NCBI GenBank assembly: GCA_001179505.1
Contig: CDMY01000488.1
Span: forward strand, 124,001 to 188,000
Origin: Vitrella brassicaformis CCMP3155
Taxonomy: Eukaryota > Protista > Chromerida
Length of the DNA stretch: 64,000 nucleotides
Reading direction: 5' to 3'
Shown: positions 25,181-58,546 of the stretch, in pieces
Position numbering within the stretch: position 1 is the first letter of the stretch
Layout of the letters: every line of letters begins with the position of its first letter
The notes under the pieces: generated by a model
What the model saw: the letters and a program-made list of their open reading frames with translations, nothing else
What the model was told of the DNA's origin: nothing
Database searches by the model: none
Position numbers and translations under genes: made by a program

Positions 25181-25480
25181 NNNNNNNNNNNNNNNNNNNN
25201 NNNNNNNNNNNNNNNNNNNNNNNNNNNNNNNNNNNNNNNNNNNNNNNNNNNNNNNNNNNNNNNNNNNNNNNNNNNNNNNNNNNNNNNNNNNNNNNNNNNN
25301 NNNNNNNNNNNNNNNNNNNNNNNNNNNNNNNNNNNNNNNNNNNNNNNNNNNNNNNNNNNNNNNNNNNNNNNNNNNNNNNNNNNNNNNNNNNNNNNNNNNN
25401 NNNNNNNNNNNNNNNNNNNNNNNNNNNNNNNNNNNNNNNNNNNNNNNNNNNNNNNNNNNNNNNNNNNNNNNNNNNNNNNN
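25181..25480. other. Assembly gap (300 N) flanked by poly-C
   Basis: Run of N with C homopolymers on both sides. Confidence 0.99.
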
Positions 25481-28670: not shown

Positions 28671-29069
28671 GTATCTCACACAAATGGTTCGGATCTCAAG
28701 TCCTGCATGCACGTCCTTCGCTCGCTTTCAACCTCTCAACGTGAGAGGAGAGAGATGGATCTGTTTGCTCTCAGCTCGCTCCTTGTGCGTAGGGTTGCCT
28801 GAAACCGGTGCCAACTCCTCAGAAACTGGGCAAAGCGTCCGTCCTCTCTGTACGCGATTGAGACGTATCGAGCAGTCCACCAAACTATTTGGCTGCCCAT
28901 TTCTTCGCTACTCACTGGATGTGAGTCACTTGGCGCTCTGACCTTGGGTGTACGTACGGCCGTCGAACCGGGTGAGTAGACGAACATCGCCGCGACGATA
29001 CACCCATTCTGGCGGCTGATTGAGGACCTAAATGTGCAACGTGGTTGCTGATGGTGTTGATCTGCGGCA

Positions 29070-35553: not shown

Positions 35554-38500
35554 TCAGACGGCCTTCATGTCGGTGGTCTCATCCGACGGCGAGCCGTCCT
35601 CATCGTCGTCGCTTTTTTTGGGCAGCGGCAGCGTCAGCTGGTCCCGCAGCTGCATGGCCGCGCAGGGGTAGACGAACATGGCGAAGTAGTCGCTGACCAT
35701 GTCGCCCCCAATCCCGTAAAACTCCCGCACCTTCGCCCGCCACACCGCACCAAACAGACCGGTGCAGCACATGATGGCCTACACACACACAGCGAGAGAC
35801 AGAGATGAAGATGACAGCACAGAGGCGAGTATGGATCCACGCGTCCCCTCACTCACTGACCCATGCGATGGTGTGGAGGTTGGGCACACCAGCGGCCGCC
35901 TGTATGATGAGCAGAGCGAAGCACCCATAAAAAGTTGCGGCCAGGCCGATGAGGCACAGGTTTGCCGTGAGGCGGGACTGTGTGCGGTGGGCGATGGGGG
36001 AGAAGGCGCCCACGGGGTTGACGAGGTAGACGAGGAATGTCGACAGCATCCCCCATGTCGGCCTGTAAAAAAGCTGCAACAGCGAGGAAGGAGGCGGTGT
36101 GGTCTGGTGTGCAGGTCGATCTGTGTCTGTGTTGTGTGGTGGGGTGCTGCCTGACCGTCGTGAGGCCGTGTTTCCACTGCTGCCATGGGTACTGTCTGAC
36201 GTCGCCCTTGTCGTAGGCACACACCCACCTGAGCACACAGACACACTCATAGAAGTACTCTGATGGATGTTTGCTTGCGAGTGTGAGGCGCCTCATGCAC
36301 TCAACTCACTCACTCACTCACCACATGGATGCGCACATGTAGCACACGATGATGGTGAACAGGAGGCCCGTCACTATGCTGCCCGTCTGCAGGGCGCTCA
36401 GCGCCTTTTCGCCACCAGCCACCAACAGCGCTGCGACACACAGACAGAAGGAGGGGACATGCCGTCCATCCATCCATCCATCCACCGGTCTGTTGATGGA
36501 TGCACCTGTGGCTGTCGCTCCCTCTGTCAGTGACCAGAACACTCGTGTGAGTGTGGTGGTCTCCTGGCTGCCGTTGTCACTGATAGAGTCCACCACGAGG
36601 GAGCCAGAGTCGCTCGTCGTGATGAAGTAGATCGTCAGCGCCACCAGGCTGACGCCCGACAAGAATCGGCCCACACCGGCCTGCAGACAGACAGACAGAC
36701 AGACAGAGGAGAGAGCCGCATCTACAGCTGAACGGCTGAACGCATTGCAGCGCGTGTATGTCTTACGTAGTGGTCTGAAGCATCGCCAAGGTGACCGATC
36801 GACAAAATATACACACACACAAGCAAGGATATGCATCACACGCTCCCTCCCTGTGTGTGTGTCCGTCGTGTGTCAGTCAGCCCAGCCGTACCCATGACGT
36901 CGAACCACATGTCATTCGTCCCCCTGCACGTCAGCCGCACATAATCGTCTGGCCCAGGCACCTGCACCCGAGACATCCACACACACGCAGACAGACAGAC
37001 AGAGTCGATCTCCACTGCTGGGTGGGATGGGATGGGATGCACTCTCACTCACCGCAGGGAATTCCGTCGAGCAGTCGACGCCATTCCGGGCCGCCTCGCG
37101 CTCCATCCGCAGACCCGCCCCGCCAAAAATTGAAAACCTGCAGCCAGCGATTGATAATCAATCACGTGTGTGCAGCGATCGATGCCTCAAGTGCAGTGCG
37201 CATCTATCGTGATAGCTGTGCTGACTGACCAGAAGAAAGTGTACAAGACGGGGGCGGACATGGTTCCGTTCAGCACCTGCCGGATGGTCCTGCCGCGGGA
37301 GATCTTTGCGATGAAGAGGCCGACGAAGGGACAAAAGGCGATCCACCAGCCCCAGTAGAAGATCGTCCACGAGTTCATCCAGCCCTGGGGCGCGCCGGTG
37401 CCGTCGGGCGATGATTTGGCCTCCTGCTCAAATGCATCGGACCATGACCCGAGCTTCAGGATCTGCACACACATCGGACAGGCAGACGTCGGCCGCTTGT
37501 TTTGGGCTTGTGTGAGTGTCTGGGCGGGTGTGTGGCTGACGCACTCACTCACCCATTGGAAGTAGACGCCGACGGACTGCGTGTAGAGGTTGAGGAGGTA
37601 CCAGGTGTTGTCCGAAAACATAACGACGACCAGCAGCAGGTTGCCCAACAGAAAGCAGAATTGGGACAGAAACTTAATGCCGGCCTTCAGACCTGCAGTC
37701 ACGAACGTCACACCCACGCGGCATGTGTGTGGAGATGTGTGTGTGTGTGTGGGACGTACCCGACACGCATGAGGCGAGCGATATCACAGTGATGACCCAC
37801 AGGACGATCACGTTATTCTGTAGGGTGCCGGGAAAATTGGGCTCGTACCTGCACACACAACACACGTGCATCCATCCATCCATCTACGAGGGGGGCAGAC
37901 AGAACCCATCGTGAGCCACTGTGTGTATTTGTTTACCGGGCCAGCCCCTGGTTGAGTTGCATGACCCCCAGACCCAAGGAAGTGCACACGCCGAAGATGG
38001 TGCAGATGATCGAGATGATATCCTGAAGACACACACACACACACACATACACAATTGTTGTGTGGCAGTGTGTGTGTCTGTGCCACTGACCACAAAGTCC
38101 CCGACAGGCCCGAAGATGTGTTCGCCGATCAGCGGGTAGAATGCCGACTTCATGGCCAGAGGGAGGCCGAAGCGGTAACACAACAGGCCCAAGAGAAGCC
38201 CAACGATAGCGTAAACCACATACCCGTGCAGCCCCTGTCCATCCACACCACGCCACACCGACATCGAATGTCTAATGCCTGCCATGTGAGCCCGCCCCCT
38301 CCGCAGTACCCAGTGGAAAAGTGTGATGAGCATGGACCACTGCGCCCGCTCGTTGTCTTCCATCTCTGCCCAGCGCGAGCCGTGGCACTGGCCCGTACCG
38401 GGCACAACGCTGCCGTCAGCGTTGTGTCGCACCGCCCCGGCGAAGGGGTTTCCATAACACGGCTCATAGTGAAAGATCGGCTCAGCCTACATCGAGTTGC

Positions 38501-39869: not shown

Positions 39870-42800
39870 ATGGCGACTCGTCACGGCCGGGCGGCGCGCG
39901 ACGACGGCCCTGAGATACCCCTGCCTAGTGAACGCATCCGCGACCCGCTGCCTGACAGAAACCCCGGCGACAAAGAGCAGCTTCGGAGATCGCCGAATGA
40001 GAAGGCCATCGTGGTGCAGGAGAACTGGCTCAAGAAGCTGGCGGAGGAGATGGCCAAGAGCGGTGCGGCTGTGCAGCCGTACACGTCGCCGCTGCTGCAG
40101 AGCTTCATAATGGCGTCTCTGGGGCTGCGCGCCAAAGACAGCAAAGACAAACACACACGCGACATGCGCCAAGAGGTAGGACAGCCTGTGTGTGTTCATC
40201 GGTGGGGTGGGAGGAGGGGAAGGGGGGTTCAGCGGTATGATGGTGCCGTGTGTGTGATGCTTTCGGACCGTCTGTGTCTGTGTCGGTGTGTGTGTGTGTA
40301 GGAGTACAAGTATATGCGCAATGGTTATTTGGCCAACCACGTGGAGATGAGGCTCAGGTCCATGAACCTGTCGGCGGGCAAGAAGGTACGCATGTCGAGG
40401 CAGACAGCACTGTGTCTGTCCATCGACGGCCAATGTGTCCATGATGCTCTGTGTGTGTGTGTTGGTGTGTGTGTGTGTGTGTGTGTGTAGTATCAGGTTG
40501 GTCGTGAGAGTCAGCGTCAGTACTGTAGCAAGAAGAAAAAGAGGACCGTCGGCATGGCAGACAGGTCACTCACTCACACGCAGCCACACGGATGGATGTG
40601 TAGATCTGTCTGTGTGTGTGTTGTGTTGCGTCGTGTGTTTAGGTATTGGGTGATCAAGGGGCGTGAGTTGTGGGTGTACCGCGAGGCGTTTGAAAAGGAA
40701 GGAGAAGCAAGCCCAAAGGTGCACAGCTGACGAACTTACATGTCGATACTCAACGAGTGAGTGCATGTCTGTGTCTGTGTGTGTGTCGTGCGGTCAGGTG
40801 TACACTTTGGCGGGAGCACAGCACACTTTCCTCCAATACGAGGAGCGACCCGCCATCTTCCCCAACACCATACCTCACGTGAGCACACACACGCGCGGGC
40901 GCACGCTCACTCTGTCTGTGTGCCTCTACCTCTGTCTGTCTCTGTGTGTGTGTGTGTGTGTGGGTGGTGTGTGTGATGATTTAGATTGACGAGAATGGCA
41001 AGCTGGTGCGGAAGAAGCCCTTCGGCCGCGTGGAGATCAGGCCCAAAGACAGGACGGACAACGGCAGAGAAGGCAGACCCCTGCTCCTCTACTGCGACAA
41101 TGAACAGGTAAATACACACACTTGTCTACTATGACACACACACACACGGAGGTGGGATGGATGTGTCTAGTGCGTGTGTGTGTGTGTCTGTGTGTGTATT
41201 ATGCGCAGGAGTTCAAGGACCTGAAGACGCTGGTTGAGTCGTCGCGCTTCTTCGAAGACGCCAAAACGTTCGAGCTCATCAGGTCAACCCCCACTCCCAC
41301 ACGACATCCATCCATCTATCCATCGGCTTGTCTGTCCTGTCTACATGCCTGCAGGAAGTGTGTGAATCGCATGGTGTTCAAGGACACGCAGTTCGCCATG
41401 GATAGGCTCAAGGCCGAGTTTGAGCAGAGGAAGAAGGACAAGGAGCTCGTCGACTCGTTCACCAAGAAGCTCCTCCACCTCGAGGCCAACAAGGCATTCT
41501 CCAAGTGGAAGGCCACGTACTTGCGCAAGTCGCTCAGCCTCAACGCCCATGTCCAATCCCTCACACGGTCAGTCAGTGACACTCAACCCCCCACCACTCA
41601 CACCCCTCTCTCGCTCCACAACACACACAGAGAGAGACTTGTTCTCTGCCTGTCTGTCTGTGTGTGGTGTCCACCGCCCACAGGTCGCTGTACGACACGT
41701 TCAAGCGTCGGCACAAGAAGCAGTACATGAGCATCGAGGAGCTGACGACAGCGTCGGTCGAGATGGTGCAGGAGGCCTACCGCCGCGGCATCGCACAGCG
41801 CCACGCCAACGAGACCCGGCGCCTCATGCACATGCGCTTCCACCCCCAGGCGGCGGGCGGTGGGATGACCACCACCAGCACCATGATGAGCTCCACATTC
41901 AGCCCCATCACCTTCACACCAGGGGCTGCCACCGCACCCGCCGGCCTGGGCGGCTCGCTCAACTTCTCGACTCCGTACGTGTGTGTGTGTGTCCATTTGC
42001 CGAGTGTCTGCACACGCATACACGCGATGGTGTGTCTGTGTGTGTGTGTGTGTGTGCAGGTCTTCTGCCGGGCTGCCTGGTGGTACGACACGTTCTGCGC
42101 CGGGTGCGTTGGGGTCAGGGGAGGGTGAGGTCAAGCGTTTCGTGAAGAACCGTCTGAAGGTGGGCAAGCTGGGGCGGGAGTTCGCCGTGGCCTACGACGT
42201 CCACCCCACACTGAGAGAGTGGTTCCAGACACCACACGTAAGCCCCCCTCCCCCCCCCCGACACACACACACAGAGAGAGAGAGGGAGAGAGAGATGCAT
42301 GCCCACGTGCAAATGTGTGTGTCGATGTGTTTGTGAGTGCATGCAGGCGGAGAACAACTGTAGCAGCGACTCGATGGGCTTGGAGCGTGCGTGGGTGATG
42401 CTGGCCGACGACCTGTCGCGTCTGCTCTGGATTCCCGACAGCATCGGCGAGAACGACCGGCAGCGCATCAACGCCGCCATGCGGTACTTCGTCCCCATGG
42501 ACGGCATCTCGGCCATCATCGTCAACACACCCAGACCCAAAGACTTCTCCGTCTTCAACGTCTTCGGCGCACAGGTGCGTGTGTACACCCCTGCGCCCTT
42601 CACGTGTGTGGCACTCTCTCTCTCCCCCTTCCCCTCTCTGTGTGCTGTGCTGTGCTGTGCTGTGTGTCAGGAGCCTGAGTTTGTCAAGAGGATGCAGCTG
42701 GGGGTCAAGTCGTTCATGAAGACCAGCCAGTTCGCCCAGGACGTCTCGTCGTCGGTGGTGTCGGGCGCTGCGCGCAAGATCACCCGGCCCGTGGAGACCC

Positions 42801-45800
42801 GGTCCGGCAGCTGGTTCACCATCTGCGGGCCCAAGATCGGCCTCCCATTCTCAATACCGGGTGCGTCTCGCGTGTTATTCGTGTGTGTGAGTCGTGTGTC
42901 ACACCAGTGTACGTGTGGCGTGTGGGCGTGTCTTTTGGTGGGTTCAGAGTTGTTCCAGACCGATGCCGAGAGGGTGACGCTGCTCAAGCTGAACTTCGAG
43001 ATCGACGTAGGCAGAAGACGGATGACTACCGACAGTCTGCAAGTCCCTGTCTGTGTGTGTGTGTGTGTGTGTGGTGTAGTCTGCAAGTCTGAACCACGCG
43101 TTGCTGGAGGAGGTCAAGCGGCTCGACGGCAATTTCATGGCACGCACCATGGGCCAGGCGGGCAACACCGTCGGCTCGCTCTTCAGCACCTCCAAAAAGC
43201 AAACAGGTGCAGTGCGCACACACACACACACAGACAAGCCCCCTACACACAGGTCGATCCATCCATCCATCCATCCGTGTGTGTGCAGACAAGACGGACG
43301 ACACTCTGCTGAGGACGTACGCCACCTTCAGCACCCTCTACCAGCGGTACCGTACGGCCACCAAGCCGGGCCTCACCCCGGTGTACGGCTGCCGATTCGT
43401 GCTGGAGATCCCCATCAACGCCGAGAATGGACACAAGCACAGAGACAACTACCCCAACTACCAAGACGCCAGACGCAAGTTCATGCAGGGTAGCTTCCTA
43501 CCTAATTGCCTGCCCTCGTGCTGCTGTGCTCGGCTCGGTCGTCCTCTCATTTGATTTGTGTGTGTTGTGTGTGTTGGGTCTGTCTGTCTGTCTGTGTTTA
43601 GCGGTGGAGGGGACGTTGGACATCTGGGCCAAGCACCCCGACGAGACGAGAGAAGACGCCGACTTCATCGTCGGCACCGGCACTGTCAGCCTCGCGCCGC
43701 TCGGCACTTCAGACGTCCTGCCCGCCGACCAGGCACGCACTCTTTACAGCCAGACACACAGAGAGGTTGACTGACAAGATGCGATGCTTTCCCTCGCTCC
43801 TTTTCGTCTGGTCTGCACACAGATCAACTTGGTGTCCGTTGTCGACAGCGAGAATCCCTTCACGGTAGACAACCACCCATCCACCACACGGCCCCTCACA
43901 TGCCCTGCCTGCCTGCCTGCCTGCCTTTGCTGCATTGTGCAGGAGTCTCAGCGGACTGCGTTGGGGAGTGTGGAGGCTCCGGCGGGTCTGGCCCCCGAGG
44001 GTGCGGGTGAGGCCACCCCGGCCCCCTCGCGTGTGCGCAAGGTGGGCCAGGTGAAGCTCAAGTGCAACGTGGCCAGGGTGGTGGAGCCCGTCGCCAACCG
44101 GCCCCTCTCGCCAGACCTACTCGGACTCAGCCAACTGCAGGTACGTGTGTGTGGCGGGAGTGTGGGAATCTGTTGTGGTGCATGCTTCATCTGTTGTGCA
44201 TCGGTTTGTCAGGGTGTGACGTCCATGAGCAAGATGATCGACCCCGATGACGAGCCAGCAGAGGGGCAGCCACCCAAATTGCTGGTCAGTGGCAGAACTG
44301 CAATACGCAGCAGAAAAAAGGACAATGGCGGTCCTCCGGCCTGTGTTGGCGAGTCATCATCCCTGCGTGTGTGTGTGTGTGTGTGTGCAGGATTCGGTGG
44401 AGAAGCGCGAGGGCAGCGTGATGGAGTTCTTCATCAAGAAGCTCGAACTCACCGACACAACTGCAGACAGAGACCAAAACCCGGCGTACTTCATCCGTAC
44501 GCACACGCGCATCCACCGACCCCCACCGCCCAATCGCCCCAATGACCATCTCGCTGCCTTGTTGTCGCCTGCGATTGTGTCGTCGTCCATTCGTGTGTGC
44601 AGATATGACAAGTGGTGACGTGAGCTGCGTGACGGGCGTGGCTTCGCAAAGCGGCGGCGGCACGGGGTGCGAGTACAATGGCAAGTACTACCTGAGCCTC
44701 TACGACAACACCCCGTTCGAGCGGGTGAGGTTCGTGAAGCTGACGGTATTCAAGGTCAACGCCGGCTACACCTCAACCTCAGATCTCGAGCAGGCCGCTG
44801 TACGGGTAGGTAACCCAAACTGACTGACGGGCAGGCAGTGAGAGAGATGGGGGGAGAGGGGGGGAGGGGGGGAGGGGCGAAGTGTTGTTCCATCCATCCA
44901 TCCATCCATTGGTCAGTTTGGTCTGGCGACGGCGCCCAACTTCACGGATTCCACGAAGGTGGGCGAGCTGGTGTTCGACACGTGGGCAATGGAGCCCAAC
45001 AGCGCACATGACAGCGGGCAGACCTACGCACTCTTCAAGCCAGGTCTGGCTGTCTGTCTGGGTGTGGAGTGTGGGGCCCAGGTGACGGCACCCGTGTGGG
45101 CATTGCGTGTGCGTGTGCGTGTGTGTATGTGTATGTGTGTGCAGGTCTGGCGAGCCAGCTGATGGGCAAGAGTGCCGACCTCGCTGCCAGGCAGCATCTC
45201 GCCAACGCCTTCGGACCAACGGAACGAGGGGTCAGTCATCTTTCTGTCTGCCTGCCTGCCTACCGGGATGGATGGATCTCTCTCTGTGTTTCTGTGTGTG
45301 TGTGCAGTTGGCGCCTGACGTGCAGAAAGAGCAGTTGGTGGCTGACGTGCAGCTGCACATGCGTGTGTCCCTCCGCAACCGCGACGCCGTGCAGCTTGAG
45401 AGGCAACGCAACGGCGAACCGCTCATTCTCGTCGGTGACAAGGTACGTGACCCACCCACCGACTCAGTCACCCCACCTCTGCACACACACTCATATGGCT
45501 CTGTGTGTGTGTGTGTGTGTGTGTGTGCAGGTGTTGTTGATGCTGGAGGAGCCGTTCAAGTATCCGGAGACGCAGCTGGAGTACAGGCAGCGTTTCTGCC
45601 ACCCTTGCCCTGCCAGAGAACTCACCGAAGAGGAACACAGGAAACTGAGGGAACAAACGCCATTCGAGCCAGGGAGGGCGGGCAAGTTGGGGTGTCCACT
45701 CAGGCGGATATGCAACCGGTGCGTACACACGTGGGGCGGGCAGCCAGGCACAAACACGACGATAGAGCCAGCGAGTGGCCACAGTAAATGCTGGATCGGC

Positions 45801-48800
45801 TGTGTCCGTCCGGTGTGTGGGCGTCCCCCCATGTCCACCACACATACATGTGTGTAGGGCTGAGCACCAGGCCTCTGGCATACTGACGGAGTACGACCCC
45901 AAGTCGGGGATGTGGAAGCTCAAGGAGTACGACCCCAAGAAGGTCCACCCGCTACCTCTCTACGTCAAAGACCCGGTCCCTCATGTGGTCAGTCGACACA
46001 CCCACACCACACCACACTCGTTTCAATCACGGTGTCTGTGTCTGTCTGTCTGTCTGTCTGCACATGCAGTTCCGTCTGCCCGACAACGAGAAGCTGTTCC
46101 TGGACAAGAAGCTGCCCGGCGTGTGGAAGCGCATCATCGCCGACGGCTTCAAACCAGGAGACATCGTCGACAGACTCACACACAGGTCAGCACAATCAAC
46201 ACAGCAGCACACCAACACGGCCCGGCCGACGCTTGCTGATGTGTGACGTGTGCATGGTTTGTGTTGCTTGTGCAGGGTGCGTTATGTGCCCGCGACGGTT
46301 TTGGCGGTTTACCGGAATAACACGGCGGCTCTCCAGTGGTCCAAAGAAGAGAATGAGCGAAGAACGTTCGAACAAGTGAAGCTGCCCGGTCAGCGAAGAG
46401 TGACCCACACAACCACACAAACCACACAAACCACACCCACACACACATGGGGCGTGCGTGCGTGCGTGTTGGTGCTGTGCTGCCTGGATGGCTGGATGGA
46501 TGTGCGTGTGCAGCGTCGATCATGGCGTTCAAGGACCAGCGGATTCTCGCCGGCGTGCCGCTGGCACTGCTCAAGTCGCCACACCAGGCGGGATGCTCCA
46601 TCTACGACTGCGGCGTCGTCAAAACACACAACGGTCGGCTCGCAACACACCACCCCACACCACACCACACCACACTCACCGAGACAAAGACAAAGACACC
46701 TGCGTCGGCTGCAGGTTTGACGGTGCCCGAGCGGTCGTATGGCGGCATCCTGCCGATCGACGCCAACCCGGCCTTCTCGCAGTACGAGTGGACAGTCACC
46801 GTCAGATGCCAATCAGAGAAGGTGCCAATGTCTTGACACATACACACACACACAAACAGAGAGAGAGCAAGAAAGACCTCAGTGTGCTGTGCTGTGCTGT
46901 GCTGTGTGGCGTGCAGGAGATGTTGGATTGGGTGACGATAGTGCGCAACGGGGTGCGTGAGCACGCCTACAAGGTCGGCCAGGCGTACCAGAAGGTGCTC
47001 GATGACGAGGAGCGGCGCCGAAATGTCCAGCTCGCCAGATACGCCGCCGGGGTGGACATCCAACGCGCCGCCCCGCAGAAGGGCAAGCTTGACCTGGTGC
47101 TCGTTGAGGCCAACATCCGGGTGCAGCAGCCATCCACCAAACTCAACAGGTCGGTGCGTTTTCAACACGCCAAGGCCATGAACAACACACACACACACAT
47201 CATGGGTGTACCCATGTGTGTCGTTCATTCCTTCAGGATGTTTGAGGACAGCGAGCGTCAGTTGAGTGGCCGGGCCGCCGGCACCCTCGACCTCTACGCC
47301 ACCTTCCAGTACGGCAACCTGCCCCAGCAGCTCTACGAGTCCATCGTGGCCGAGCAGCAGCCCACCCTCCAGATGCAGGCCCGGGAGGCGGTGCGCAAGT
47401 ACATCGTCGAGACCCTGCTGCAGTTCACTCCGCCCAAGATCACCATCGGGGAGGTCTCCCGGCCCAGCCCACCGCCCAGGGAGATGGTCGACAAGTTCGC
47501 CAACCAGGTCAACTTCCAAGCGGCGCCAGGAAGGACAACCGAACAGGCCAAAGCCGACAGGTATCGATCACAGACAAGCGTCTTCGTGTTGTGGTGTTGA
47601 TGTGTATCGTGTCTGTCCACCAGGCGTCGGTTTGCGGGTCAGTTGCACAGGGTGACGTGGTCTCGCCTGCAGACGGCAGCGACCCTCGAGGACGTGCCGC
47701 CGCTGATCAAGGACTACGACGTCAAGCCCACCAACGTCATCGACAACGTGGCCGGGCTGCTCGTGCAGAGGAGAGACGCCGTCGGACACCAGCAGTTCTA
47801 CCGCGCCTCATGGGCTGACCACACACAACTCAAGGTAAGTCCGCCTGGGTTGGCCAGCTGGCGGAAAGAAGGGCACGACGCACAATGGCGTGTTGTTGGG
47901 GCTGTCAGGCGTCTGGCGGTTTCATGTTTCGCACTGGGCTCATCTCGGTGCCTGACGACGTGCCGGTGCTGGTGGTCAAGGTGCTGACGCCCGCCAACTG
48001 GGGCGCCGTGCAGAAGGACACCGTCATCGGCACTGTCACCATCTCCACCCACGAGCTCATGGACGCGAAGAAACCGTTCCAAGTCGTGTGGAAAGCCCTG
48101 CAGGTGACACCTGACCACACACACACAGTGCAGGTATCGACGACATTCCGTTGTCCGTTTCTCTCTGTCCATTCCGTCCATCCCATATATCAGCCAGTGC
48201 AGAAGTACCGGGTGACGGTGCCCGGCGTCAAGAGGGCGACAATCTTCGAGAGCTACGCGGCCATGAGTGCGTTTGTGCTGAAGCATGACAAGACCGTCAA
48301 GGACCCCCAGCTGTACCAGGCTATCGCCAACCACAACATAGACGCGGATGAGCCCATCAAGTTCCCGCCCCCAAGGGGCCACAAGGAGGGCACCACCATA
48401 CGGGTGGGCGCCTGGGTGGGAGGGACAGACAGCACTCGCCGAATGGCAAATGACGGAACACAAGACACACAGACACACATGACATGCCTGGCTCGCTGCC
48501 GTGTGCAGGTGTTTGAGGACAGCCGCTACAGCGGTGAGGTGTGCTTCATGGTACGGTACGCCCCCACCAGCCGCCACCTGCTTCTGCACGACCTCCCATC
48601 CCCCATCGCATACCGAGTAGGAGACAAGGCATATCTGCCCCCATCCATCCGTCTGTCATGCGTCTGCTACACTGTGTGTGCAGGATTTTGAGATGGATCA
48701 CAGCCGTCGTGTGTTTGACGAGGCGGGTGCCCCCATCCGGCTGGGATGCTACGACCCCAACCTCAACTCATGCAAGTGAGTACACTCACACACACGCACA

Positions 48801-51800
48801 CATGCAGCCAAATGGCTTCGCCTCGGCCACTTACCTGCACACGTATGTGCGTCAGGTTGCTGGCCCTCAAGGACACATCATCGCACGAGCCGTCATCCGA
48901 TCAAGGTCGGTCACCACTCTCTCTCACTTAGCCACGCGCACCACACGCATCTGCCCGTCCGTCTGCCGCCTGCGTGTGTGTGCAGTGTCGACTCAGGGCG
49001 GTGCGGCGAGCGAGGTGTCGACCACGCCATCAGTGGAGGGCGCCGAGGGCACCCTGGCACACGTGAGGCCGCCGGAGAAATGGGCCTTCGAAAGACGGCA
49101 GTACAACAAGTGAGCGGCTACCACACACTCACACACACGCTCAAATACACAGGAGGGAGTAGTGTCCTCGGTGGACTGACGGACGCCTGTGTATGTGTGT
49201 GTGTGTGTGTGTGGTGCAGGTACCAGATGTGCGAGCCTCTGGGCGGCATATGGGGGCAGCGTGCCAAGAAGCAGTGGCAGCAGTGGATCATGAGCATCGG
49301 GAAGGACCCCGAGAAACAGGAGAAGTCTCCCGGGGAGAAGCAGTGGGAGGCACTGCAGACCTACTGGACATTCGCATCAAAGGTGTGGCCGCACCCAACA
49401 CACACCTCATGTGCTTGTCATGTCCATCTGTCCACCGCTGGCACCCATCTGTGTGTGTGCAGTCGTCGGATCAGCGTGACTTGGACGAGAACTGGGAGAG
49501 CAAGGTCAATGCGGCCATCAAAGAAGGCGGAGAGAAGTCGATCGCCCCGCACTACCTGCTGGAGGTAGGTACATCCATCCATCCATCCATCGGCCACATC
49601 ACCACCACACACAACATAGCACAACACAACACAACACAACACAAACACTCCTGTGTGTGTGTGTGTGTGTGTCACATAAAATCACCGAAACACATGTGAC
49701 AGGTGTGGAGCGGCAAGGATGGCACGGATGGCAAGGATGACGAGACGCCTCAGTTCCTGGGCGAGATGTTGCTCAACGTCGCTGAGGCCAGCAGGATGCC
49801 ACGTCCCTACCCACTGAGGGCCGAGACGCCGCTCGGCAGAGTTCCTGATCTAGTGCCGAAGAAGGACACGCGAACGGGCCAGATTATTCTCGACAAGGAC
49901 GGCGAGCTGGAGATGGAAAACCCCAAGGCAACGGCTAAGGCCACTGGGACGGCCATCATCTACCTCGAGGCCTCCTGGAAGCTCACCAACCCACACTCGG
50001 GCAAATTCACCATCAGGTACAAAGACGTTGCAGGGAGATCGGAGGACATCTGTCTGTGTGTGTATGGGTGGTTGGTGGCTGGCTGTTTGTTGTGCCTGCG
50101 TGTAGGTTGAAGGAGTTGCGCAACGCCCCGTCGAGCGAGATGAAGCCCTACGTCGAGATCTGGGAGGGCGACCGCACCACCGGCGAGTGGCGCAACACTG
50201 GCATCAGGTCAGTCACTCGAGATGCCAACAGACCAAACAGACAACAGCTGAGGCCAACGTGGGTGGCGGTTTGGTGCGTGCCTGTGTGTGCAGGTCATTC
50301 GCCAAACCAACCAAAGCCAAGGCTGCGATGAAGTGGGAGTGGACCAGCACACAGGACCCAGAGCCCAGATACGTCAACTACTACACCTGGATGGACGATA
50401 CGGTCAGTGGGTAGATCAGACAGATCACACACATCCATTGGATGGATGGATGGGCTCGCGTATGTGTTGTGTGTCATTCAGCACCACAAGGACGGCGTTG
50501 AGCATGAGATCCATGTGCCCATCGCCAGGCATGCCCCCGGAGTGCCGCACGAGATCCCCTTCCACAGACTAACAGGCGACAGCAGCGATCCGGGTACGTT
50601 CGCCTCAAAGGCGACACACACACGCGCACTTACAGAAAGACACAAGGGAGCGGGCCGACCTCCTGTGTGGTGCTTGCGTTCATGTTGTCATTGCAGAGAG
50701 CGCAGAGGGCATCAAGCGTCAGGTCTGGGACATGTGCCGCAACGGCATCCCGCCACTGCTGCGGCCCTACCTCTGGCTCCAGCTGTCAGGTACACATACA
50801 AACACACACACACACACACACACAGACTCGCTGGCCTTGTGCATGTGTCCGTCTGCCCGTCTATGTGTCTGTGTGTGCGTCATGCAGGTGCCCAGAAGAT
50901 CCGCAATGACTGCACGCAGTACCTGCAGCAGATTCGGGTGGCTGATGCACCCTACGCGTTCCTGCGCGGGAAGTACCAGGACCGCAGCAGCGCCGTGTAC
51001 AGCCAGATCGCCGAGGACATCGGCGACATGCAGCCCGTATACACCACCGACTTCAGCACCGCCGGCCAGGCCAAGCAGGCACAGTTCTGGGTGAGCCTGC
51101 GGGAGGTGCTTGAGGGTTTGGTGATGTTTTCGTCCACACCGCGATACTGCGAGTTGACGTATCGGTTGCCGCCGACCGACCCCCGTTCGGCCCACACGGA
51201 GGCCCACGCCATAGGCAACCCCGTCAACTACTGCAAGGGCCTCGCACTCATTGCGTACTACCTCATGCTGGACCATGGAGGTCAGCAAGGCGGGGCGGGA
51301 GGGGCCACGCAGGACACACGTCGGGCAATGCATTGATTGCAGTGTGCGTCGTCCTTTACCTACAGGTCTGACCTTGTCTGAGGAGGATGTCTTCTTCCTC
51401 CTCTATGCCATCGCCGCTGGCAAAAAGTGAGTGACAGGGCCGACACGCCGACTTACTTCACTTACACCAACCCTTGGCATCCGTGTGCTTGTGTGCTCCG
51501 TCCGCTTCCACCACACAATGTGTCAGGTTGACGTCGTCGAATGCCGAGGGTCCGTTTGTGGACTACTTCAGTGCCAACACGCCCGAGGAGGAGTACAAGA
51601 CGGACTTCAGCGACGGGAAACGGAGGCCGCTCACCGCCACCATCCCTGCCGCCGCCAGAGACGGACTCTTCCTAGACTGTGCCATCCAGGTCAGGGTGGG
51701 TGGGTGGGTGCGGACATGAATGCACGGTCAAGAATGGCGTGTGGTGTGGTGTGGTGTGTTGGTGCAGTTGATCCATCCCCGCGAGTCAGCGTTGCTCAAG

Positions 51801-54800
51801 ACGATGGGTTTCCATCTGGAGGAAGCCTTCTTCCCCTGCTTCATGAGCCTCTTCGCCGGATGGCTGCCATCGCAGGTCAGTGCTGCCTGCACGTGGGTGG
51901 GCAGTTCGTGACACAAACGACGTGACACCGTTGTGTGTGGATGGCGTGGCGTGGCATGGCATGGCATGGCATGCAGACGTTGTATCGGCTGTGGGATCTG
52001 TGCTTCTGCGCCCTCTTCGCACCGAGCATGCCAACAGCTGCCGTCCCACCGCCGCAGCAACCAGCTGACGGCACACCGACAGCCGTGAGTGGGCGATATC
52101 CACACACATCGACAGCCAGCCAGCAAAGGAGCACAACCCTGTGTACATGTTGTTTCGTTACAGGTGGTGTCGGCGATGCCCATGGAGACGCTGAGCCGCG
52201 GGCGGCGTGTGCTGATTAGCCTGGCGTACTCGGTCATCTCACACGCCTTCACTGACCTCAACGCTGAGGTGGGCGAGCGACAGACACAGGGAGGGAGAGG
52301 AGAGATGGCAGATGACGTGTGGCGGGTTATTCTCTCTCTCTCCCTTTCTCTCTCTCTGTGTGTGTGAATGCAGACGACGTGTGTGCAGTTTCACAACAGC
52401 CTGAAGGACATCATGACGGGTCTGCGAGACCCCGCACTGCTGAAGCAATGGGTACGAAACATACAGGCATCGGCAGGCAACGGCTCTCCATCTGCCTGTC
52501 CTGTGATTTATCCATCCATTCCTTCAGATTAATCAGGGTGAGTTTGTCTTGTTCGACAACACGGTGCACTTCAGCTACATCGCCCGACTCCAGTCGGCGT
52601 ACATCGCGGTCAGCCAACACTGTCGCACTTACTCACAAACCCGGATCGACGAGGCATCCACCATCTCTGTCCTTGTGTCTATGTCTTTGTCGCAGGAGCA
52701 AACACGTCAGCTGCACTTCCACCGGGAGCAGAATCGCCTGCTGCAGGAGATGGTCCTCCCCTACTACGAGTACCACGCATCCTTCGACACCAGCAAGACC
52801 GCCAAAGACTCCACTGGCCTCGCCGTCGCGCCCAGCTTCATCATTGACACCCGGACCAGGGACGGCAAGGGCAAGCCACAGATCACGAGCCTCAAGTACC
52901 CGGGCGTGAGCGTGTTCGACCTCCAGACACTCGTTTACCCCCTGCTCAAGCTGCACGCGCTGCATCTCTCGGCAGACATGAGGGAGCCGCCGCCAGACGC
53001 CATAGGATACCTCATCGTCAGGTCAGACAGACACGTCTTTGTGATGTCTTGGTGCGTGTTGGAATGACGGGCGGTTGGTGGTTCCTGCATGTATAGGGTT
53101 GATGAGATCGCCAATTTCGCGACGTCCCAGGAAAAGGCGCGTCCGCTGGTGGCCGTCACCTTCAATAAGCGCATAGAGTCCACAGCGCCCGCAGATACCC
53201 GTGGCTTCGACAAGGTGAGAAGCGGCATACATGGCCCTCCAAACCCACCCAGCCAGAATCCACTCATTCGTGCCTGCTGTGTCTGTCGTGTGTGTCATGC
53301 ACGTGTCGTACGATGCAGTATGTGTGGTCCAGTGGCAACGTCCTGCACTTTCCAATCACCAGCAGCACCAGCACCCCCTACTCATTCCAGGTGGAGGCCA
53401 AGGACCACGACCGGCGGGGAGGGGGCGTGGGCGACGCCATGAATATCGACCGCCTGGGGCTCCTCAACGTCAACGGCCGCACCGGCGTGCAGCTGCCCAC
53501 CAACCCCGTGTCGACGGCCTGGCTCTTCAACTACAAATTCCCGCCCCTGCAGCAGGGCCGCACAAACAAGGCAACACTCACCCTCTCGTATTTCCTCTAC
53601 CTCCCACGAAATGACAAGAAGCTCGAGGAATACCAGCTGCAGCAGCCCATCCAGCGGACAGTGGCGCAGCCGGCACCGCCACAGCAGCAGCCGGCAGTCG
53701 CGGACGCAGCTTTGGCGGGCCAGCCACAGGCTGCGCAACAGCCACGGTCGGTGGAGGGGCGGGCCCCTTTGGGGCAGGGGACGGCGGGTGCGACGCCAGG
53801 TGGCGCTGCTGCTGTCGGTGGTGCGGGGGAGTTTACCCCAGCTGCAGCAGCGCCAGTGAGGCCTGCGCCGATGATGGAGCCGGTGGGGGAGCCGATGGAC
53901 CTGGGCAAAGGACAGGTATGTATGTGTGGCAACAGCAGTCAGCGGTCTTCATCTCATCCGTGGCTGTCGTCTTTGTGTGTCAGTGGGGTGACATGAGCCC
54001 GTTCCATCCTCTGTGGGTGGAGATGGACCTCACGCAGATGACGCCCAGGCTCCAGATGGACCTCTCCTTCACAGGACAGCAGGCCAAGAAGGTCAGCAAG
54101 CCCCAACCAACACACATATGGCGGAAGATCTTCATCGCATGGCTGGTGGGTGGCCCTGCTGCCCGTGTGCGTATGTGTGTTCCGTGCAGTTCTTTGACGT
54201 GGTGCGGCAGCGTGTGCAGCGGGCGATGCAGATATCGCCCGCCATGATTGACGCATTCATGCCTCCCATCGTCCCAAACCCCATCGTGGGAAGCAGCTCT
54301 TACTGGTCAGTACTTATCGAATACGATATACACACACCCACATGCGGACAAACACATCCGGTCCGTCTGTCTGTCTGTCTGTCAGGTCGTTGCTGAGCGA
54401 TTCCCCGGCTTACTCGGCCACCGGCGCCGAACAGCTGGCCATTGTGAAGCCTGTGGCACAGGTAGAGCGACGCAGCAATGCATGGATGAATGCCCCCCTC
54501 CCCCGTGTGTCTCCGTGCATTCGTCCTTGTGTTTTGTCCGTATGTGCACGGTGCAGGAGGGCATCAACCGAGCTCAGCTGGTGAATTTGCTCTTCAACTC
54601 CGTCCCCTCCTGGGGCGCCTACACCAACGAGATCATCCGCCTCTTCGGCAGGATCGTCACCCCCCCATCCCAGCAGCAGTCACAAAACATCTATACCGAC
54701 CCCCGGCTGTACCGACACACAATCTGTTTGCGAGAGTTCATCGCTGCCATCATCACTACAGCACGGTACTGGCTGACCACAGAGAAACGAGAAGCCCAAG

Positions 54801-57800
54801 TCGTCAAAATGTGTGTGTGTGTGTGTGTGTGTGTGTTCTGTGGTTTTGCAGCGGCACTGTGTCGCAGAAGGCGGAGTTGCTGTTTGACCTGTTTGGGTAT
54901 CACGACCCCGCCCGCAAGGATGACGCCTCCACCCACTGCTTCCACCTCACGGACGAGCCCGGCGCATCGGCCTACAAGGTCGGCATCCAGAAGACCCCAT
55001 TCACACTGCCCAAATCCGCTGCAAGGGTGAGAGATGGACAACCACACACAAGTGGAATGGATGCACTCGCAATCGTTGGGCTTTGTTTGTGCAGGACAAG
55101 ATCCCCAACGCCATCACGCTGACAGCCGTGACGTCCATCGTGCAGGCGGTGCTGCTCCGCTGCCTCGTCTACGTCGACAAGCTCGCTGCCCACCAGATCG
55201 CCGCTGCCATTTTCGAGGTACACGCACACACACAACACACACAACACACCCACACTTTCATGACACCCACCAGCGCGACACGGTCTCTCCCTCTGTCTCT
55301 CTGTCTCTCTGTCTCTCTGTCTCTCTGTCTCTCAGCACACTGGTCTGGTGCCGCGTGTGGTGTCCGCCAAGCTGGCGCCTCGCGACGGGTCGGCCCCGAT
55401 CGACGTCAGCCCGGCTGTGTGCAAGTACATCGGGAGTCGAGCTGGCGACACGGGTAGCGTCGGGATCGACTTTGGCATGTGCAAGTCGCTGGTGGAGCTG
55501 ACCATATCGGACCCCTTCCCCGGTGCCTCCAAGGACCTCCTCATTACCATCGCACTCCCAAAGGGCGTCACCAAGAAAATCACACTCGAGGTGCATTGGA
55601 AGAGGGGAACAACGGGCCAGGGGGAAGAAGGGCGTTGGCGATTTTTCCCCTTATGTGTGGGTCGCAGGTGGGTATGAGCGGCATCTTTGTGACCGGCGAG
55701 GGCGGGAACATGCCGAGGGCTCCCAATGCGCCGACCATGGCGGCCTCCAATGCGTCGTTTACACTCACGTACGTCAGAAACAAAGGGAATGGGGAATGGG
55801 ACAAGGTGGTCAACGAGAAGCGCAATCTTGATGTGTCTGTCAGATCGGATGAGGTGGCGATTGACAAGCTCTCGTTCGTGGGTCTCTTCACAGGCTCGGC
55901 ATTCCTCAGCGAAGTCAGCCACACACACAAAGGGCCGCACCGACCACTGTCTTATCCCATGTTATGGTGTGTTGCCGCCCCCTCGCCCCTTGATGCAGCC
56001 GCTGCGTCAGCTGACGTCATCTGTGGACCGCACCTTCCTCCCCAACTTCCCCTTGTCGTGTGAAGTCACCATCGACCACACCATCGAGGAAGAAGACAGC
56101 GAAGTCACGGACATATTGGGCGCCGGCGTCACCAAGTCCGCCGAACAAAAAGAACGGGGTCAGGCAACCAGGGATTGACAGACAGCCTTGAGGCGGCGGG
56201 AAGGAGGCCTGTCGATGCCTTACATATGGATGTGTGTGTTGGCAGAGGCCAAAGAGACCGCGTGGCAGAGGGCGACTGGCCAGACAGCGGCGCAGAAGGA
56301 GGCCAGACAACAGAAACAGGAGCAAAAGTAATGGACAGCCGGAGAGCGCCGCGGCCCACTTCAGGCTCGAGCAATGTGTGCAATGTATGTGGTCAATCTG
56401 TGTCAGGAAGGAGAAAAAGCTGAAGAAGGTTGAGTTGACTGTGTCGTTCCGCCCCGCGCACGTGCCGGGCCGCGGCCGGGTCTCCGCCACCCGTGCCACA
56501 AAAGTGTACAAGGGCGCCAAGGCCACACTGCTCGGCAAAGCCAAGTGGGTGTCCGTGCTGCTGCAGCCATCATGAGTGGACAGCCGTGTGGGCTGTATGC
56601 TTGCTTGTCATGTTTATGGGTGCGTGCGTGCAGCCCCGAGGACCACAAGGTGCGGGCGTACCTCTCGGACACCGTCGGCGAGTTCAAATCAAAGGTCAGC
56701 CAGCGCACTCCCGCCTGCACGATCTCCTTCTTTCCTGTCTGTCTGCCTGCCTGCCTCCGATTACTGGCTATGCCATCTTGTGTGGCTCGGCTCGTGCAGG
56801 TGATGCAAGCGTGTCGGGAGCTCGCCCCCAAGGTCTCTGACAGCAAGGGGAAATTCCTCTACCAACACGCAGTGGTGGACGAATCACATGAGGTAAGTGA
56901 ATGAGTGAGCGATGGGGGGCGGGAGCCGGCATGCGTCGACGTCAAGAAAGGTGACCCAGCCACACGCCGCTATGATATGTTTGCAGGTTTTGCTTGACGT
57001 CGTCGGCGGTCGGCTGACGTTGGAGGACCACCTGACGTTCCTCGACTACGCAGACGAGGGGTTCACACCCGGCAGCGAGACAGTCTTCAAGTTCACAATA
57101 CAGGTACAAACACACTCACAATCACACGTACATGGCATGACCGCCCCCTCTCGAGTGGTGTCCACCCACTTCTATCCTCAGGAGCGCCAGGGTGGCGCCG
57201 GTGCCCAGCCCACCAGCAGCAAGAAGGCCGCCAGAGCCCAGCCGGCCTCCCCCCGACTCGACGACTTCACCCTCAGCAACACCCTGTCCAACGGGGAGGA
57301 AGCCACGCCGGGCGAGGTCGTGCTGCGATACCCCCTCGCACAATCCGTGTGGAAGCTCGAGGCCGGTGCGGGCAGGGCCGGCAAGAGGGTCATCGAGTAC
57401 AGGGCGGGCGAGACGGCGCCTGCGAACGGCCTGGCGTACGTCAAGACGGTGAGTGACGGCAAGGTGGCCTGGCGGCCCGCGGTGGTGCTCAGCCAGGCGG
57501 GCAGGAAGACGGCTGCGCAGACACAGACACAGACACAGCCTCCCGTTAGTGCTGCAGCAACTGAACAGGTGACAGCACACATACACACACCATGCCGATT
57601 CACGAAAGGGCGTCTGTGTGTGTGTTCAGATGCATTACCGCGTAGCATTGTTGGACCCGTATGAGTTTGTCCCCCTCAGGGGCGCGGGCACGACGCCGAC
57701 AGCATCCCCCACGGCCGGCGCCGGCGGGCAGGGCGATGGCACGATGGTGCTGCCCGAGAGCGACATCCTATTCTGCTTTAGCGAACCTACCATCAAGGTC

Positions 57801-58151
57801 AGCCGGGGAGGCTGCCTGTCCTCTGGTGGGTGTGGTGTGCTTGAGGTTGTGGGTGTGTTTGCTGTCCACACGACACACAGGCTGGGGAGTCGACTGAGGA
57901 GCTGGCTGATGAGGAGAAGAAGCAGATAGAGGAACTCGCCGGCCGCCGGCTCGACAGCAAGAGAATAGCACAGCAACTCACCAAGGTCAGCCTGCCCGCC
58001 ACACATGGATGCCATCGATGGCATCTGAACCCCTTTGTTTGTGTGTCTGCAGGACCGGCAGGCAGCCAAGAAGGCAAAGACGCGTGTGCCTGTCCGGCTG
58101 GTAGAGGATTACCTCCAGACGATCAAGAACTCAGACAAGGGGAACAAGTGA
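39870..58151 (+). CDS. Giant multi-exon protein: PH-like, multiple C2-like, Tudor/SH3-like, degenerate TBC (RabGAP), EF-hand-like, ubiquitin-like and C-terminal HTH-like domains
   Basis: ATG at 39870. I followed dozens of GT-AG exons to TGA at 58149-58151 and saw no intergenic break, though not every junction was frame-checked. PH: RYWVIKGRELWVY; TVRCQSE|EMLDWVTIVR. C2: TLDIWAKH..IVGTGTVSLAPL; VLVVKVL..KDTVIGTVTI. TBC: NGIPPLLRPYLWLQLS, SEEDVFFLL, FMSLFAGWLP..LYRLWD. EF-like: ICLREFIAAI..GTVSQKAELLFDLFG. UBL: LSDTVGEFKSKV..RLTLEDHLTFLDY. Confidence 0.8.
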
Positions 58152-58246: not shown

Positions 58247-58546
58247 NNNNNNNNNNNNNNNNNNNNNNNNNNNNNNNNNNNNNNNNNNNNNNNNNNNNNN
58301 NNNNNNNNNNNNNNNNNNNNNNNNNNNNNNNNNNNNNNNNNNNNNNNNNNNNNNNNNNNNNNNNNNNNNNNNNNNNNNNNNNNNNNNNNNNNNNNNNNNN
58401 NNNNNNNNNNNNNNNNNNNNNNNNNNNNNNNNNNNNNNNNNNNNNNNNNNNNNNNNNNNNNNNNNNNNNNNNNNNNNNNNNNNNNNNNNNNNNNNNNNNN
58501 NNNNNNNNNNNNNNNNNNNNNNNNNNNNNNNNNNNNNNNNNNNNNN
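58247..58546. other. Assembly gap (300 N) flanked by poly-G
   Basis: Run of N with G homopolymers on both sides. Confidence 0.99.

What the first reader, a model, noticed from the sequence alone, without database searches (positions are those of the whole stretch)
39870..58151. Giant PH/multi-C2/TBC protein whose RabGAP domain has lost both catalytic fingers
The TBC fold motifs are strong, but the Arg finger IxxDxxR reads IAEDIGD (Asp at 51025-51027) and the Gln finger YxQ reads YCK (51235-51237). That is a charge-swapped pseudo-GAP, likely a Rab-binding scaffold. It sits among about three PH-like and five or more C2-like domains plus an EF-hand-like pair, as in TBC1D8/9, in an estimated >3,500-aa protein. 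This design suggests a Ca2+/lipid-responsive membrane tether. In a relative of apicomplexans it is a candidate ancestral component of regulated secretion or alveolar membrane trafficking. I do not recognise this architecture from any named protein.
Basis: partly seen in the sequence, partly recalled or inferred. Interest (0 to 1): 0.75.

Follow-up and report, generated by a model that had tools for sequence, protein, structure and literature searches.

The report
Giant protein with dead Rab-GAP domain
A roughly 3,600-residue, 86-exon gene of the alga Vitrella brassicaformis contains a very divergent Rab-GAP (TBC) domain in which both catalytic residues are replaced; this is a new example of a known kind of inactive GAP, and the other claimed domains could not be confirmed.

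Summary
The window is Vitrella brassicaformis CCMP3155, contig C488.

An ab initio splice model links ATG 39870 to TGA 58149-58151. It has 86 GT-AG exons, about 3,622 codons, and no intron over 165 nt.

The TBC assignment holds, but the motifs are not "strong". Pfam PF00566 misses this locus while finding about 20 other Vitrella TBC loci exon by exon. Support comes from:
- profiles of Vitrella's own TBC exons (hhalign P 0.0025, 0.0031 and 0.0077 for three exons, colinear);
- a chain score reached by 0 of 20,000 random sets;
- ESM-Atlas neighbours of two exons.

Lys aligns with the Gln finger. No Arg lies where the Arg finger should be.

PH, C2 and EF-hand models find nothing at this locus, so the Ca2+/lipid-tether idea has no support.

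Giant TBC proteins without fingers are already known in Toxoplasma (TgTBC5, 6 and 16). The scan noted this gene before (s1-235892), almost certainly the same locus, and reported seven relatives that I could not retrieve.

The parts
39870..58151 (+). Ab initio gene model: 86 GT-AG exons, about 3,622 codons, ATG at 39870, TGA at 58149-58151. Median intron 85 nt (range 45-165). Tiny or weak exons at 40233-40385, 42060-42237, 45704-45718, 53778-53787, 54785-54799 and 57846-57848 are unreliable.
   Evidence: Self-trained dynamic-programming splice model. The hand-checked junctions of exons 51-59 agree with it.
50697..50789 (+). Exon 51, start of the TBC-like domain. It carries motif A, GIPPLLRPYLWLQL (50744-50784; the RxxxW motif).
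   Evidence: The DNA pattern for GIPxxxRxxxWxxL matches once in the window and in 0 of 100 shuffles. PF00566 is the only Pfam family among the exon's 30 ESM-Atlas neighbours; recognition 2529.
50888..51280 (+). Exon 52 (130 full codons). It holds the positions equivalent to the Arg finger and the Gln finger.
   Evidence: Ranks 1 of 1,500 peptides against a profile of Vitrella TBC exons: 10.2 bits, next best 5.9. hhalign against alignment A2 gives P=0.0025. 27 of 30 ESM-Atlas neighbours are PF00566 clusters.
51007..51027 (+). IAEDIGD, the equivalent of IxxDxxR. Ile and Asp are kept; the Arg finger is replaced by Asp (51025-51027). MQP follows where RTxP is usual.
   Evidence: Read directly from the sequence. 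Placement is by spacing and pattern, so it is an inference. There is no Arg in the 38 residues before the LREVL helix, whereas canonical Vitrella fragments have the finger Arg 11-13 residues before it.
51145..51228 (+). 28-residue insertion between the LxxVL helix and the YxQ position. Canonical TBC domains lack it.
   Evidence: hmmsearch alignment of exon 52 to the Vitrella TBC profile.
51229..51237 (+). YCK, the equivalent of YxQ. The Gln finger is replaced by Lys (51235-51237).
   Evidence: Lys aligns with the profile Gln in both hmmsearch and hhalign.
51366..51689 (+). Exons 53 (51366-51426) and 54 (51527-51689). These form the middle of the TBC-like domain (LSEEDVFFLL...).
   Evidence: The top two phmmer hits of exon 53 among 1,612 peptides are TBC fragments covering the matching Pfam region, positions 92-138. 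Junctions were checked by hand.
51768..51875 (+). Exon 55: ...FHLEEAFFPCFMSLFAGWLPSQ, equivalent to the W..tLF...LP helix.
   Evidence: hhalign against alignment A3 gives P=0.0031, profile columns 93-121.
51977..52084 (+). Exon 56: TLYRLWDLCFCA, equivalent to v.rvWD.ff.eG, followed by a Pro-rich insertion (52019-52084).
   Evidence: hhalign against A3 gives P=0.0077, profile columns 124-134, directly following those matched by exon 55.
52164..52451 (+). Exons 57 (52164-52268) and 58 (52374-52451), the presumed C-terminal helices of the domain.
   Evidence: Based on splice phases only. No significant profile match.
47909..48103 (+). Exon 39, a weak C2-like stretch (VLVVKVLTPANWGAVQKDTVIGTVTISTHEL).
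   Evidence: 8.5 bits against a Vitrella C2 profile, rank 1 of 1,208, but background reaches 7.5. Pfam C2 finds nothing.
50106..50207 (+). Exon 48, a weak C2-like stretch (SSEMKPYVEIWEGD).
   Evidence: 6.8 bits, rank 4 of 1,208, within the background range.

Best explanation
The locus is most likely one very large, intron-rich Vitrella brassicaformis gene of about 86 exons, 3,620 residues and 400 kDa.

Residues about 2,100-2,470 of its product form a highly divergent TBC (Rab-GAP) domain. The scaffold motifs are retained: GIPxxxRxxxW, IxxD, the LxxVL helix, Y-x-[Q position]-G, the W..tLF..LP helix and rvWD. Both residues that a TBC domain inserts into the Rab active site are replaced: the Arg finger by Asp and the Gln finger by Lys. 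Two insertions are also present.

The dual-finger mechanism needs both residues. The domain is therefore predicted to be GAP-dead and to act as a non-catalytic Rab-binding or scaffolding module within a large protein, as other finger-less TBC proteins do.

Shown here: the motif positions, the exon structure of the TBC region, and statistically supported similarity to canonical TBC exons. Inferred: a single transcript, loss of catalysis, and a Rab-binding or scaffold role. Nothing here shows Ca2+ or lipid sensing.
For: Gene: exon borders and phases of nine consecutive exons were read from the DNA. An ab initio chain runs from ATG 39870 to TGA 58149-58151 with 85 introns of 45-165 nt, so no gap is long enough to be intergenic. 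An earlier scan note reports a 3,620-residue protein with the same features. Exon 52 has only one copy in the genome, so that note must describe this locus.

TBC homology, exon by exon:
- hhalign against alignments of canonical Vitrella TBC exons gives P=0.0025 (exon 52), 0.0031 (exon 55) and 0.0077 (exon 56). Exons 55 and 56 match adjacent columns of profile A3 (93-121, then 124-134).
- In a single local profile, exons 52, 55 and 56 fall in colinear order.
- Exon 52 ranks 1 of 1,500 peptides against that profile.
- The colinear chain scores 11.5 bits. It was reached by 0 of 20,000 random sets and 0 of 1,411 sliding background windows.
- TBC fragments of the matching region are enriched at the top of phmmer lists for exons 52 and 53.
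- ESM-Atlas neighbours of two separate exons are TBC clusters.

Fingers: Lys aligns with the Gln finger, and there is no Arg in the 38 residues before the LREVL helix.

Precedent: both fingers are needed for TgTBC9 function, and 8 of 18 T. gondii TBC proteins lack one or both (PMC11101121).
Against: - Pfam PF00566 does not detect any exon or the locus in the genome scan.
- Neither phmmer against the PDB nor phmmer against 1.84 billion representatives finds a TBC protein with exon 52.
- hhalign against one TBC subfamily (A1) finds nothing.
- Each exon-level P value is only about 1e-2 to 1e-3.
- The AlphaFold model of exon 52 alone is unusable at pLDDT 42, so the fold itself was not shown here.
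- No transcript evidence was available.
- Several tiny exons in the model are doubtful.
- A 300-N assembly gap starts 96 nt after the stop codon.
- The Arg-finger placement rests on motif spacing, not on a scored alignment.
Confidence: 0.7

Rival explanations
1. The domain is a real TBC domain that still accelerates GTP hydrolysis in a non-canonical way, for example with Lys or another residue substituting for the fingers.
For: The scaffold motifs are retained. A basic residue (Lys) sits at the Gln-finger position.
Against: No Arg is available near the finger position, and an acidic residue sits there. Mutating the dual-finger residues abolished TgTBC9's ability to rescue its lethal knockdown (PMC11101121). 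No precedent was found here.
Confidence: 0.08
2. The region is not homologous to TBC domains. It is a lineage-specific helical region that happens to carry TBC-like short motifs.
For: All curated or large searches are blank: Pfam, the PDB and 1.84 billion representatives. The GIPxxxRxxxW pattern alone occurs 38 times in the genome, against 14 for its reversed control, and mostly away from TBC loci. Atlas recognition for exon 52 is low, 2008.
Against: Three exons each match the correct, colinear part of the TBC profiles, at P<0.01 each. The chain score is unmatched in more than 21,000 null sets. Two independent exons have TBC neighbours in the Atlas. An earlier scan note reports a TBC fold for this protein (not checked by me).
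Confidence: 0.08
3. The 18-kb locus is not one gene. It is two or more adjacent genes, or a model mis-joined across weak exons, so the 'giant multi-domain' architecture is partly an artefact.
For: The splice model is forced to form one chain. It needs several tiny or low-scoring exons at 40233-40385, 45704-45718, 53778-53787, 54785-54799 and 57846-57848. No transcript data were available. The library searches returned no protein from this locus.
Against: No non-coding gap exceeds 165 nt. The chain arrives in frame at a good terminal exon and stop.
Confidence: 0.12

Closest known systems
TBC/Rab-GAP domain family (Pfam PF00566; dual-finger mechanism)
   Same: Same order of motifs: GIPxxxRxxxW, IxxD, the LxxVL helix, Y-x-x-G, W..tLF..LP and rvWD. 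There is colinear profile similarity to canonical Vitrella TBC exons.
   Different: It scores below Pfam's detection limit. The Arg finger is Asp and the Gln finger is Lys. There is a 28-residue insertion before the YxQ position and a Pro-rich insertion after the WD helix.
Toxoplasma gondii giant and finger-less TBC proteins (TgTBC5, TgTBC6, TgTBC16; PMC11101121)
   Same: They come from a related lineage (Myzozoa), are very large (207-324 kDa, with others up to 426 kDa), and lack both the IxxDxxR and YxQ sites.
   Different: Orthology was not tested, because no Toxoplasma sequence could be retrieved with single exons. TgTBC16 also carries a Sec7 domain, and none was seen here.
Human non-catalytic TBC proteins such as TBC1D23 and TBC1D7 (from my own knowledge, not tested here)
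   Same: A TBC fold without catalytic fingers, used as an adaptor or scaffold rather than as a GAP.
   Different: They are much smaller and have different partner domains. No sequence relationship was shown.
   Same: Only that a TBC domain sits inside a multi-domain protein.
   Different: GRAM/PH and EF-hand domains were not detected here. No support for this comparison was found.

Membership tests
TBC/Rab-GAP (PF00566) | Score above the Pfam gathering cut-off (25.2 bits) | tested here: not met
   There is no hit on any exon, even at E<=10. The six-frame scan of the genome gives 41 matches, none in C488. This was tested exon by exon only; the joined domain was not scanned.
TBC/Rab-GAP (PF00566) | Colinear similarity to bona fide TBC domains across the domain | tested here: met
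   hhalign gives P=0.0025, 0.0031 and 0.0077 for exons 52, 55 and 56. Exons 55 and 56 match adjacent columns of profile A3. The colinear chain of 11.5 bits was reached by 0 of 20,000 random sets.
TBC/Rab-GAP (PF00566) | Motif A (RxxxW) | tested here: met
   GIPPLLRPYLW lies at 50744-50776.
TBC/Rab-GAP (PF00566) | Arg finger (IxxDxxR) | tested here: not met
   The motif reads IAEDIGD, with Asp at 51025-51027. There is no Arg within the 38 residues before the LREVL helix.
TBC/Rab-GAP (PF00566) | Gln finger (YxQ) | tested here: not met
   The motif reads YCK. Lys at 51235-51237 aligns with the profile Gln.
TBC/Rab-GAP (PF00566) | All-helical TBC fold | tested here: inconclusive
   AlphaFold on exon 52 alone, without an alignment, gave pLDDT 42.
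C2 domain (PF00168) | Match to the family model | tested here: not met
   No Pfam hit on about 50 segments. The genome scan gave 50 matches, none in C488. A Vitrella C2 profile gave 8.5 and 6.8 bits for exons 39 and 48 against a background maximum of 7.5.
PH domain (PF00169) | Match to the family model | tested here: not met
   No Pfam hit. The genome scan gave 12 matches, none in C488.
EF-hand pair (PF13499) | Match to the family model | tested here: not met
   No Pfam hit. None of the 150 genome-scan matches that were listed lies in C488; 5 further matches were not listed.

The most novel reading that the evidence does not exclude
The gene founds, or belongs to, a myzozoan-specific family of roughly 400-kDa proteins. 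In this family a permanently finger-less TBC domain, with the D/K substitutions conserved, is embedded among very divergent C2/PH-like beta-sandwich modules. The protein would work as a Rab-recognising membrane tether in alveolar or regulated-secretion trafficking.
Probability: 0.12. Interest if true: 0.6.

Novelty: new member of a known kind. Interest (0 to 1): 0.3.

Why it matters
Rab regulators of chromerids and apicomplexans are poorly known, and many of their TBC proteins are giant and lack catalytic fingers. This locus is a free-living relative's example with both fingers replaced, and it adds to the case that non-catalytic TBC modules are a regular part of myzozoan trafficking machinery. 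It also shows that such domains can fall below Pfam detection in intron-rich genomes. It is not a new kind of system. The more exciting part of the claim, a Ca2+/lipid-sensing tether, has no support at present.

Tried and rejected
- Pfam on about 50 stop-free + strand segments, and on the trimmed TBC exons at E<=10: nothing relevant.
- phmmer of exon 52 against the PDB: nothing at E<=10.
- phmmer of exon 52 against 1.84 billion representatives: one hit. It was a spurious sum of a 20-residue chance match repeated in a VWA-repeat protein. The gene's own product did not appear.
- Own-genome protein search with exon 52: self only, so no paralogue.
- Metagenome loci with exon 52: none.
- Word search with the 398-residue open segment 46404-47597: nothing among proteins of 219-696 residues.
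- Reaching the locus annotation through the neighbouring TLDc gene (P0104): the look-up of encoding contigs withholds this genome.
- hhalign against one TBC subfamily (A1, the TgTBC9-like small TBCs): nothing.
- A first mixed profile built from A1 plus TBC fragments: too noisy.
- AlphaFold of exon 52 alone: pLDDT 42.
- Genome-wide count of GIPxxxRxxxW: not specific to TBC loci.
- All-against-all comparison of exons: no internal repeats.
- Intron-position comparison: one paralogue (C340) shares the phase-0 intron two codons after the LP/FP dipeptide, while others differ, so it is not informative.
Full report
Origin and setting. The window is contig C488, bases 124001-188000, of a 72.7-Mb genome in 1,064 contigs. 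Proteins from this genome are named Vitrella brassicaformis CCMP3155 in public sources. The sequence is about 60% G+C. The finding lies on the + strand. Upstream is a minus-strand gene ending near 39.4 kb. Downstream is a TLDc-domain gene on the minus strand at 59863-61808 (P0104).

Observation. ATC GCC GAG GAC ATC GGC GAC at 51007-51027 reads IAEDIGD. TAC TGC AAG at 51229-51237 reads YCK. Both lie in one 393-nt exon, 50888-51280. I read its borders, and those of eight neighbouring exons, directly from the DNA. All have GT-AG introns of 76-105 nt and compatible phases.

Together, exons 50697-52451 read in the order expected of a TBC domain:
- ...GIPPLLRPYLWLQLSG...
- ...IAEDIGDMQP...
- ...LREVLEGL..[insertion]..NYCKGLALIAYYLML...
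- ...EEDVFFLL...
- ...FFPCFMSLFAGWLPSQ|TLYRLWDLCF...

Gene model. I wrote a self-trained dynamic-programming splice model using codon log-odds and splice-site matrices. It links ATG 39870 to the TGA at 58149-58151 through 86 exons. That gives about 3,622 codons, a median exon of 108 nt and a median intron of 85 nt (range 45-165). It reproduces my hand-curated junctions. No non-coding gap is long enough to be intergenic.

The weak points are a handful of tiny or low-scoring exons, listed under parts. A 300-N assembly gap also begins 96 nt after the stop. No transcript data were available to me. Exon 52 has only one copy in the genome, so that note must concern this same locus.

Is it a TBC domain? 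Curated and large-scale searches do not see it:
- Pfam gives nothing on any exon, even at E<=10.
- The PF00566 six-frame scan of the whole genome finds 41 exon-level matches in about 20 other loci, at 13-121 bits, but none in C488.
- phmmer against the PDB is blank.
- phmmer of exon 52 against 1.84 billion representatives gives one hit, which is spurious.

So 'strong TBC motifs' is an overstatement.

Three independent lines nevertheless support homology.

(i) I built alignments of canonical TBC exon fragments from Vitrella's own paralogues (A2, A3). hhalign against these gives:
- P=0.0025 for exon 52, aligned at the YxQG-helix;
- P=0.0031 for exon 55, profile columns 93-121, the W..tLF..LP helix;
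- P=0.0077 for exon 56, columns 124-134, rvWD.

Exons 55 and 56 match adjacent columns of the same profile (A3). In the single local profile of line (ii), all three exons fall in order.

(ii) In a local hmmsearch with a profile of 26 such fragments, exon 52 ranks first of 1,500 peptides, which were all the model's exons plus all open segments of the window. It scores 10.2 bits against 5.9 for the next best. The colinear chain of exons 52, 55 and 56 scores 11.5 bits. None of 20,000 random seven-peptide sets reached this (maximum 8.4). Nor did any of 1,411 sliding background windows (maximum 6.0), or any of 61 other windows of this gene (maximum 1.8). In phmmer lists, TBC fragments from the matching Pfam region take 3 of the top 6 places for exon 52 and the top 2 for exon 53. 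They make up only 1.7% of that database.

(iii) In the ESM Atlas, 27 of the 30 nearest clusters of exon 52 are PF00566 clusters. For the separate 30-residue exon 51, PF00566 is the only family present. By the tool's own calibration these are leads rather than proof.

An AlphaFold run on exon 52 alone was useless, with pLDDT 42. No search, scan or fold of the joined protein was run.

The fingers. Both hmmsearch and hhalign put Lys 51235-51237 on the profile's Gln. In the canonical Vitrella fragments the finger Arg lies 11-13 residues before the LxxVL helix. In this gene the 38 residues before LREVL contain no Arg at all. The only IxxD pattern there is IAEDIGD followed by MQP, where the canonical motif is IxxDxxRTxP. 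Assigning Asp to the finger position is an inference from spacing. The absence of an Arg finger is robust under any reasonable alignment. The domain also has a 28-residue insertion before YCK and a Pro-rich insertion after the WD helix.

Other domains. No support was found for PH, C2 or EF-hand domains:
- Pfam found none on about 50 open segments.
- Genome scans with PF00168, PF00169 and PF13499 gave 50, 12 and 155 matches elsewhere. None of the matches listed is in C488; 5 of the 155 EF-hand matches were not listed.
- There are no internal repeats between exons.
- A Vitrella C2 profile gives 8.5 bits to exon 39 and 6.8 bits to exon 48, against a background maximum of 7.5. That is suggestive at best.

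By eye several exons do look like C2 strands. Because the domains are cut into small exons, the exon-wise tests have little power. The claim is therefore unconfirmed rather than refuted.

Relatives. I found none with exon 52, either among 1.84 billion representatives or in metagenome contigs. The 398-residue segment 46404-47597 also found none among proteins of 219-696 residues. There is no paralogue in the genome. These are single-exon searches. Conservation of D/K is therefore untested here.

Mechanism. TBC GAPs act by inserting an Arg and a Gln into the Rab active site. In T. gondii, TgTBC9 with its dual-finger residues mutated could not rescue the lethal knockdown, and the R74A mutant binds its Rab more stably (PMC11101121). 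With Asp and Lys at these positions, the Vitrella domain should be catalytically dead. It most likely serves as a Rab-binding or scaffolding module. This is an inference.

Comparison and novelty. T. gondii has 18 TBC proteins. Nine exceed 200 kDa (maximum 426 kDa), only 10 have both fingers, and TgTBC5, 6 and 16 lack both. A roughly 400-kDa finger-less TBC protein in a chromerid is therefore a new member of a known kind. It is notable mainly for its extreme divergence. The idea of a Ca2+/lipid tether is unsupported.

Noticed in passing
window 59863-61808 (-) and 32130-33966 (-): Two paralogous genes with an N-terminal BTB/KCTD-like part and a TLDc domain flank the giant gene. P0104 is the downstream one, and P0105 and P0106 are further paralogues on the same contig. 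The family has at least 11 members in Vitrella.
   Followed up: partly
window 36318-38432 (-): The upstream minus-strand neighbour looks like a BCCT-type (betaine/choline/carnitine) transporter by eye. It would share a divergent intergenic region of about 470 nt with the giant gene.
   Followed up: no
window 58247-58546 (also 18010-18309 and 25181-25480): There are 300-N assembly gaps. One starts only 96 nt after the giant gene's stop codon, so the 3' end cannot be fully verified.
   Followed up: partly
window 39870-58151, introns: 43 of the 85 modelled introns contain (CA)n or (TG)n runs of four or more units, often at their ends. Introns are 56.6% G+C against 61.6% for exons.
   Followed up: partly
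window 27207-28712 (-): A 501-codon intron-less ORF that looks like an FAD-linked sugar-lactone oxidase (GULO/ALO type) by eye. I used it only to train the codon model.
   Followed up: no
window 50890-51279 (search behaviour): The exhaustive representative search did not return the gene's own product for exon 52, although other Vitrella proteins are in the sister database (P0002, P0104). Either the public model lacks this exon or the protein is missing from that library.
   Followed up: partly
L015 (G000:C340:57759-58145, -) compared with window 51875/51977: One canonical Vitrella TBC paralogue has a phase-0 intron at the same place as the exon 55/56 junction, two codons after the LP/FP dipeptide and before v.rvWD. 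Other paralogues have it 2-6 codons away.
   Followed up: partly
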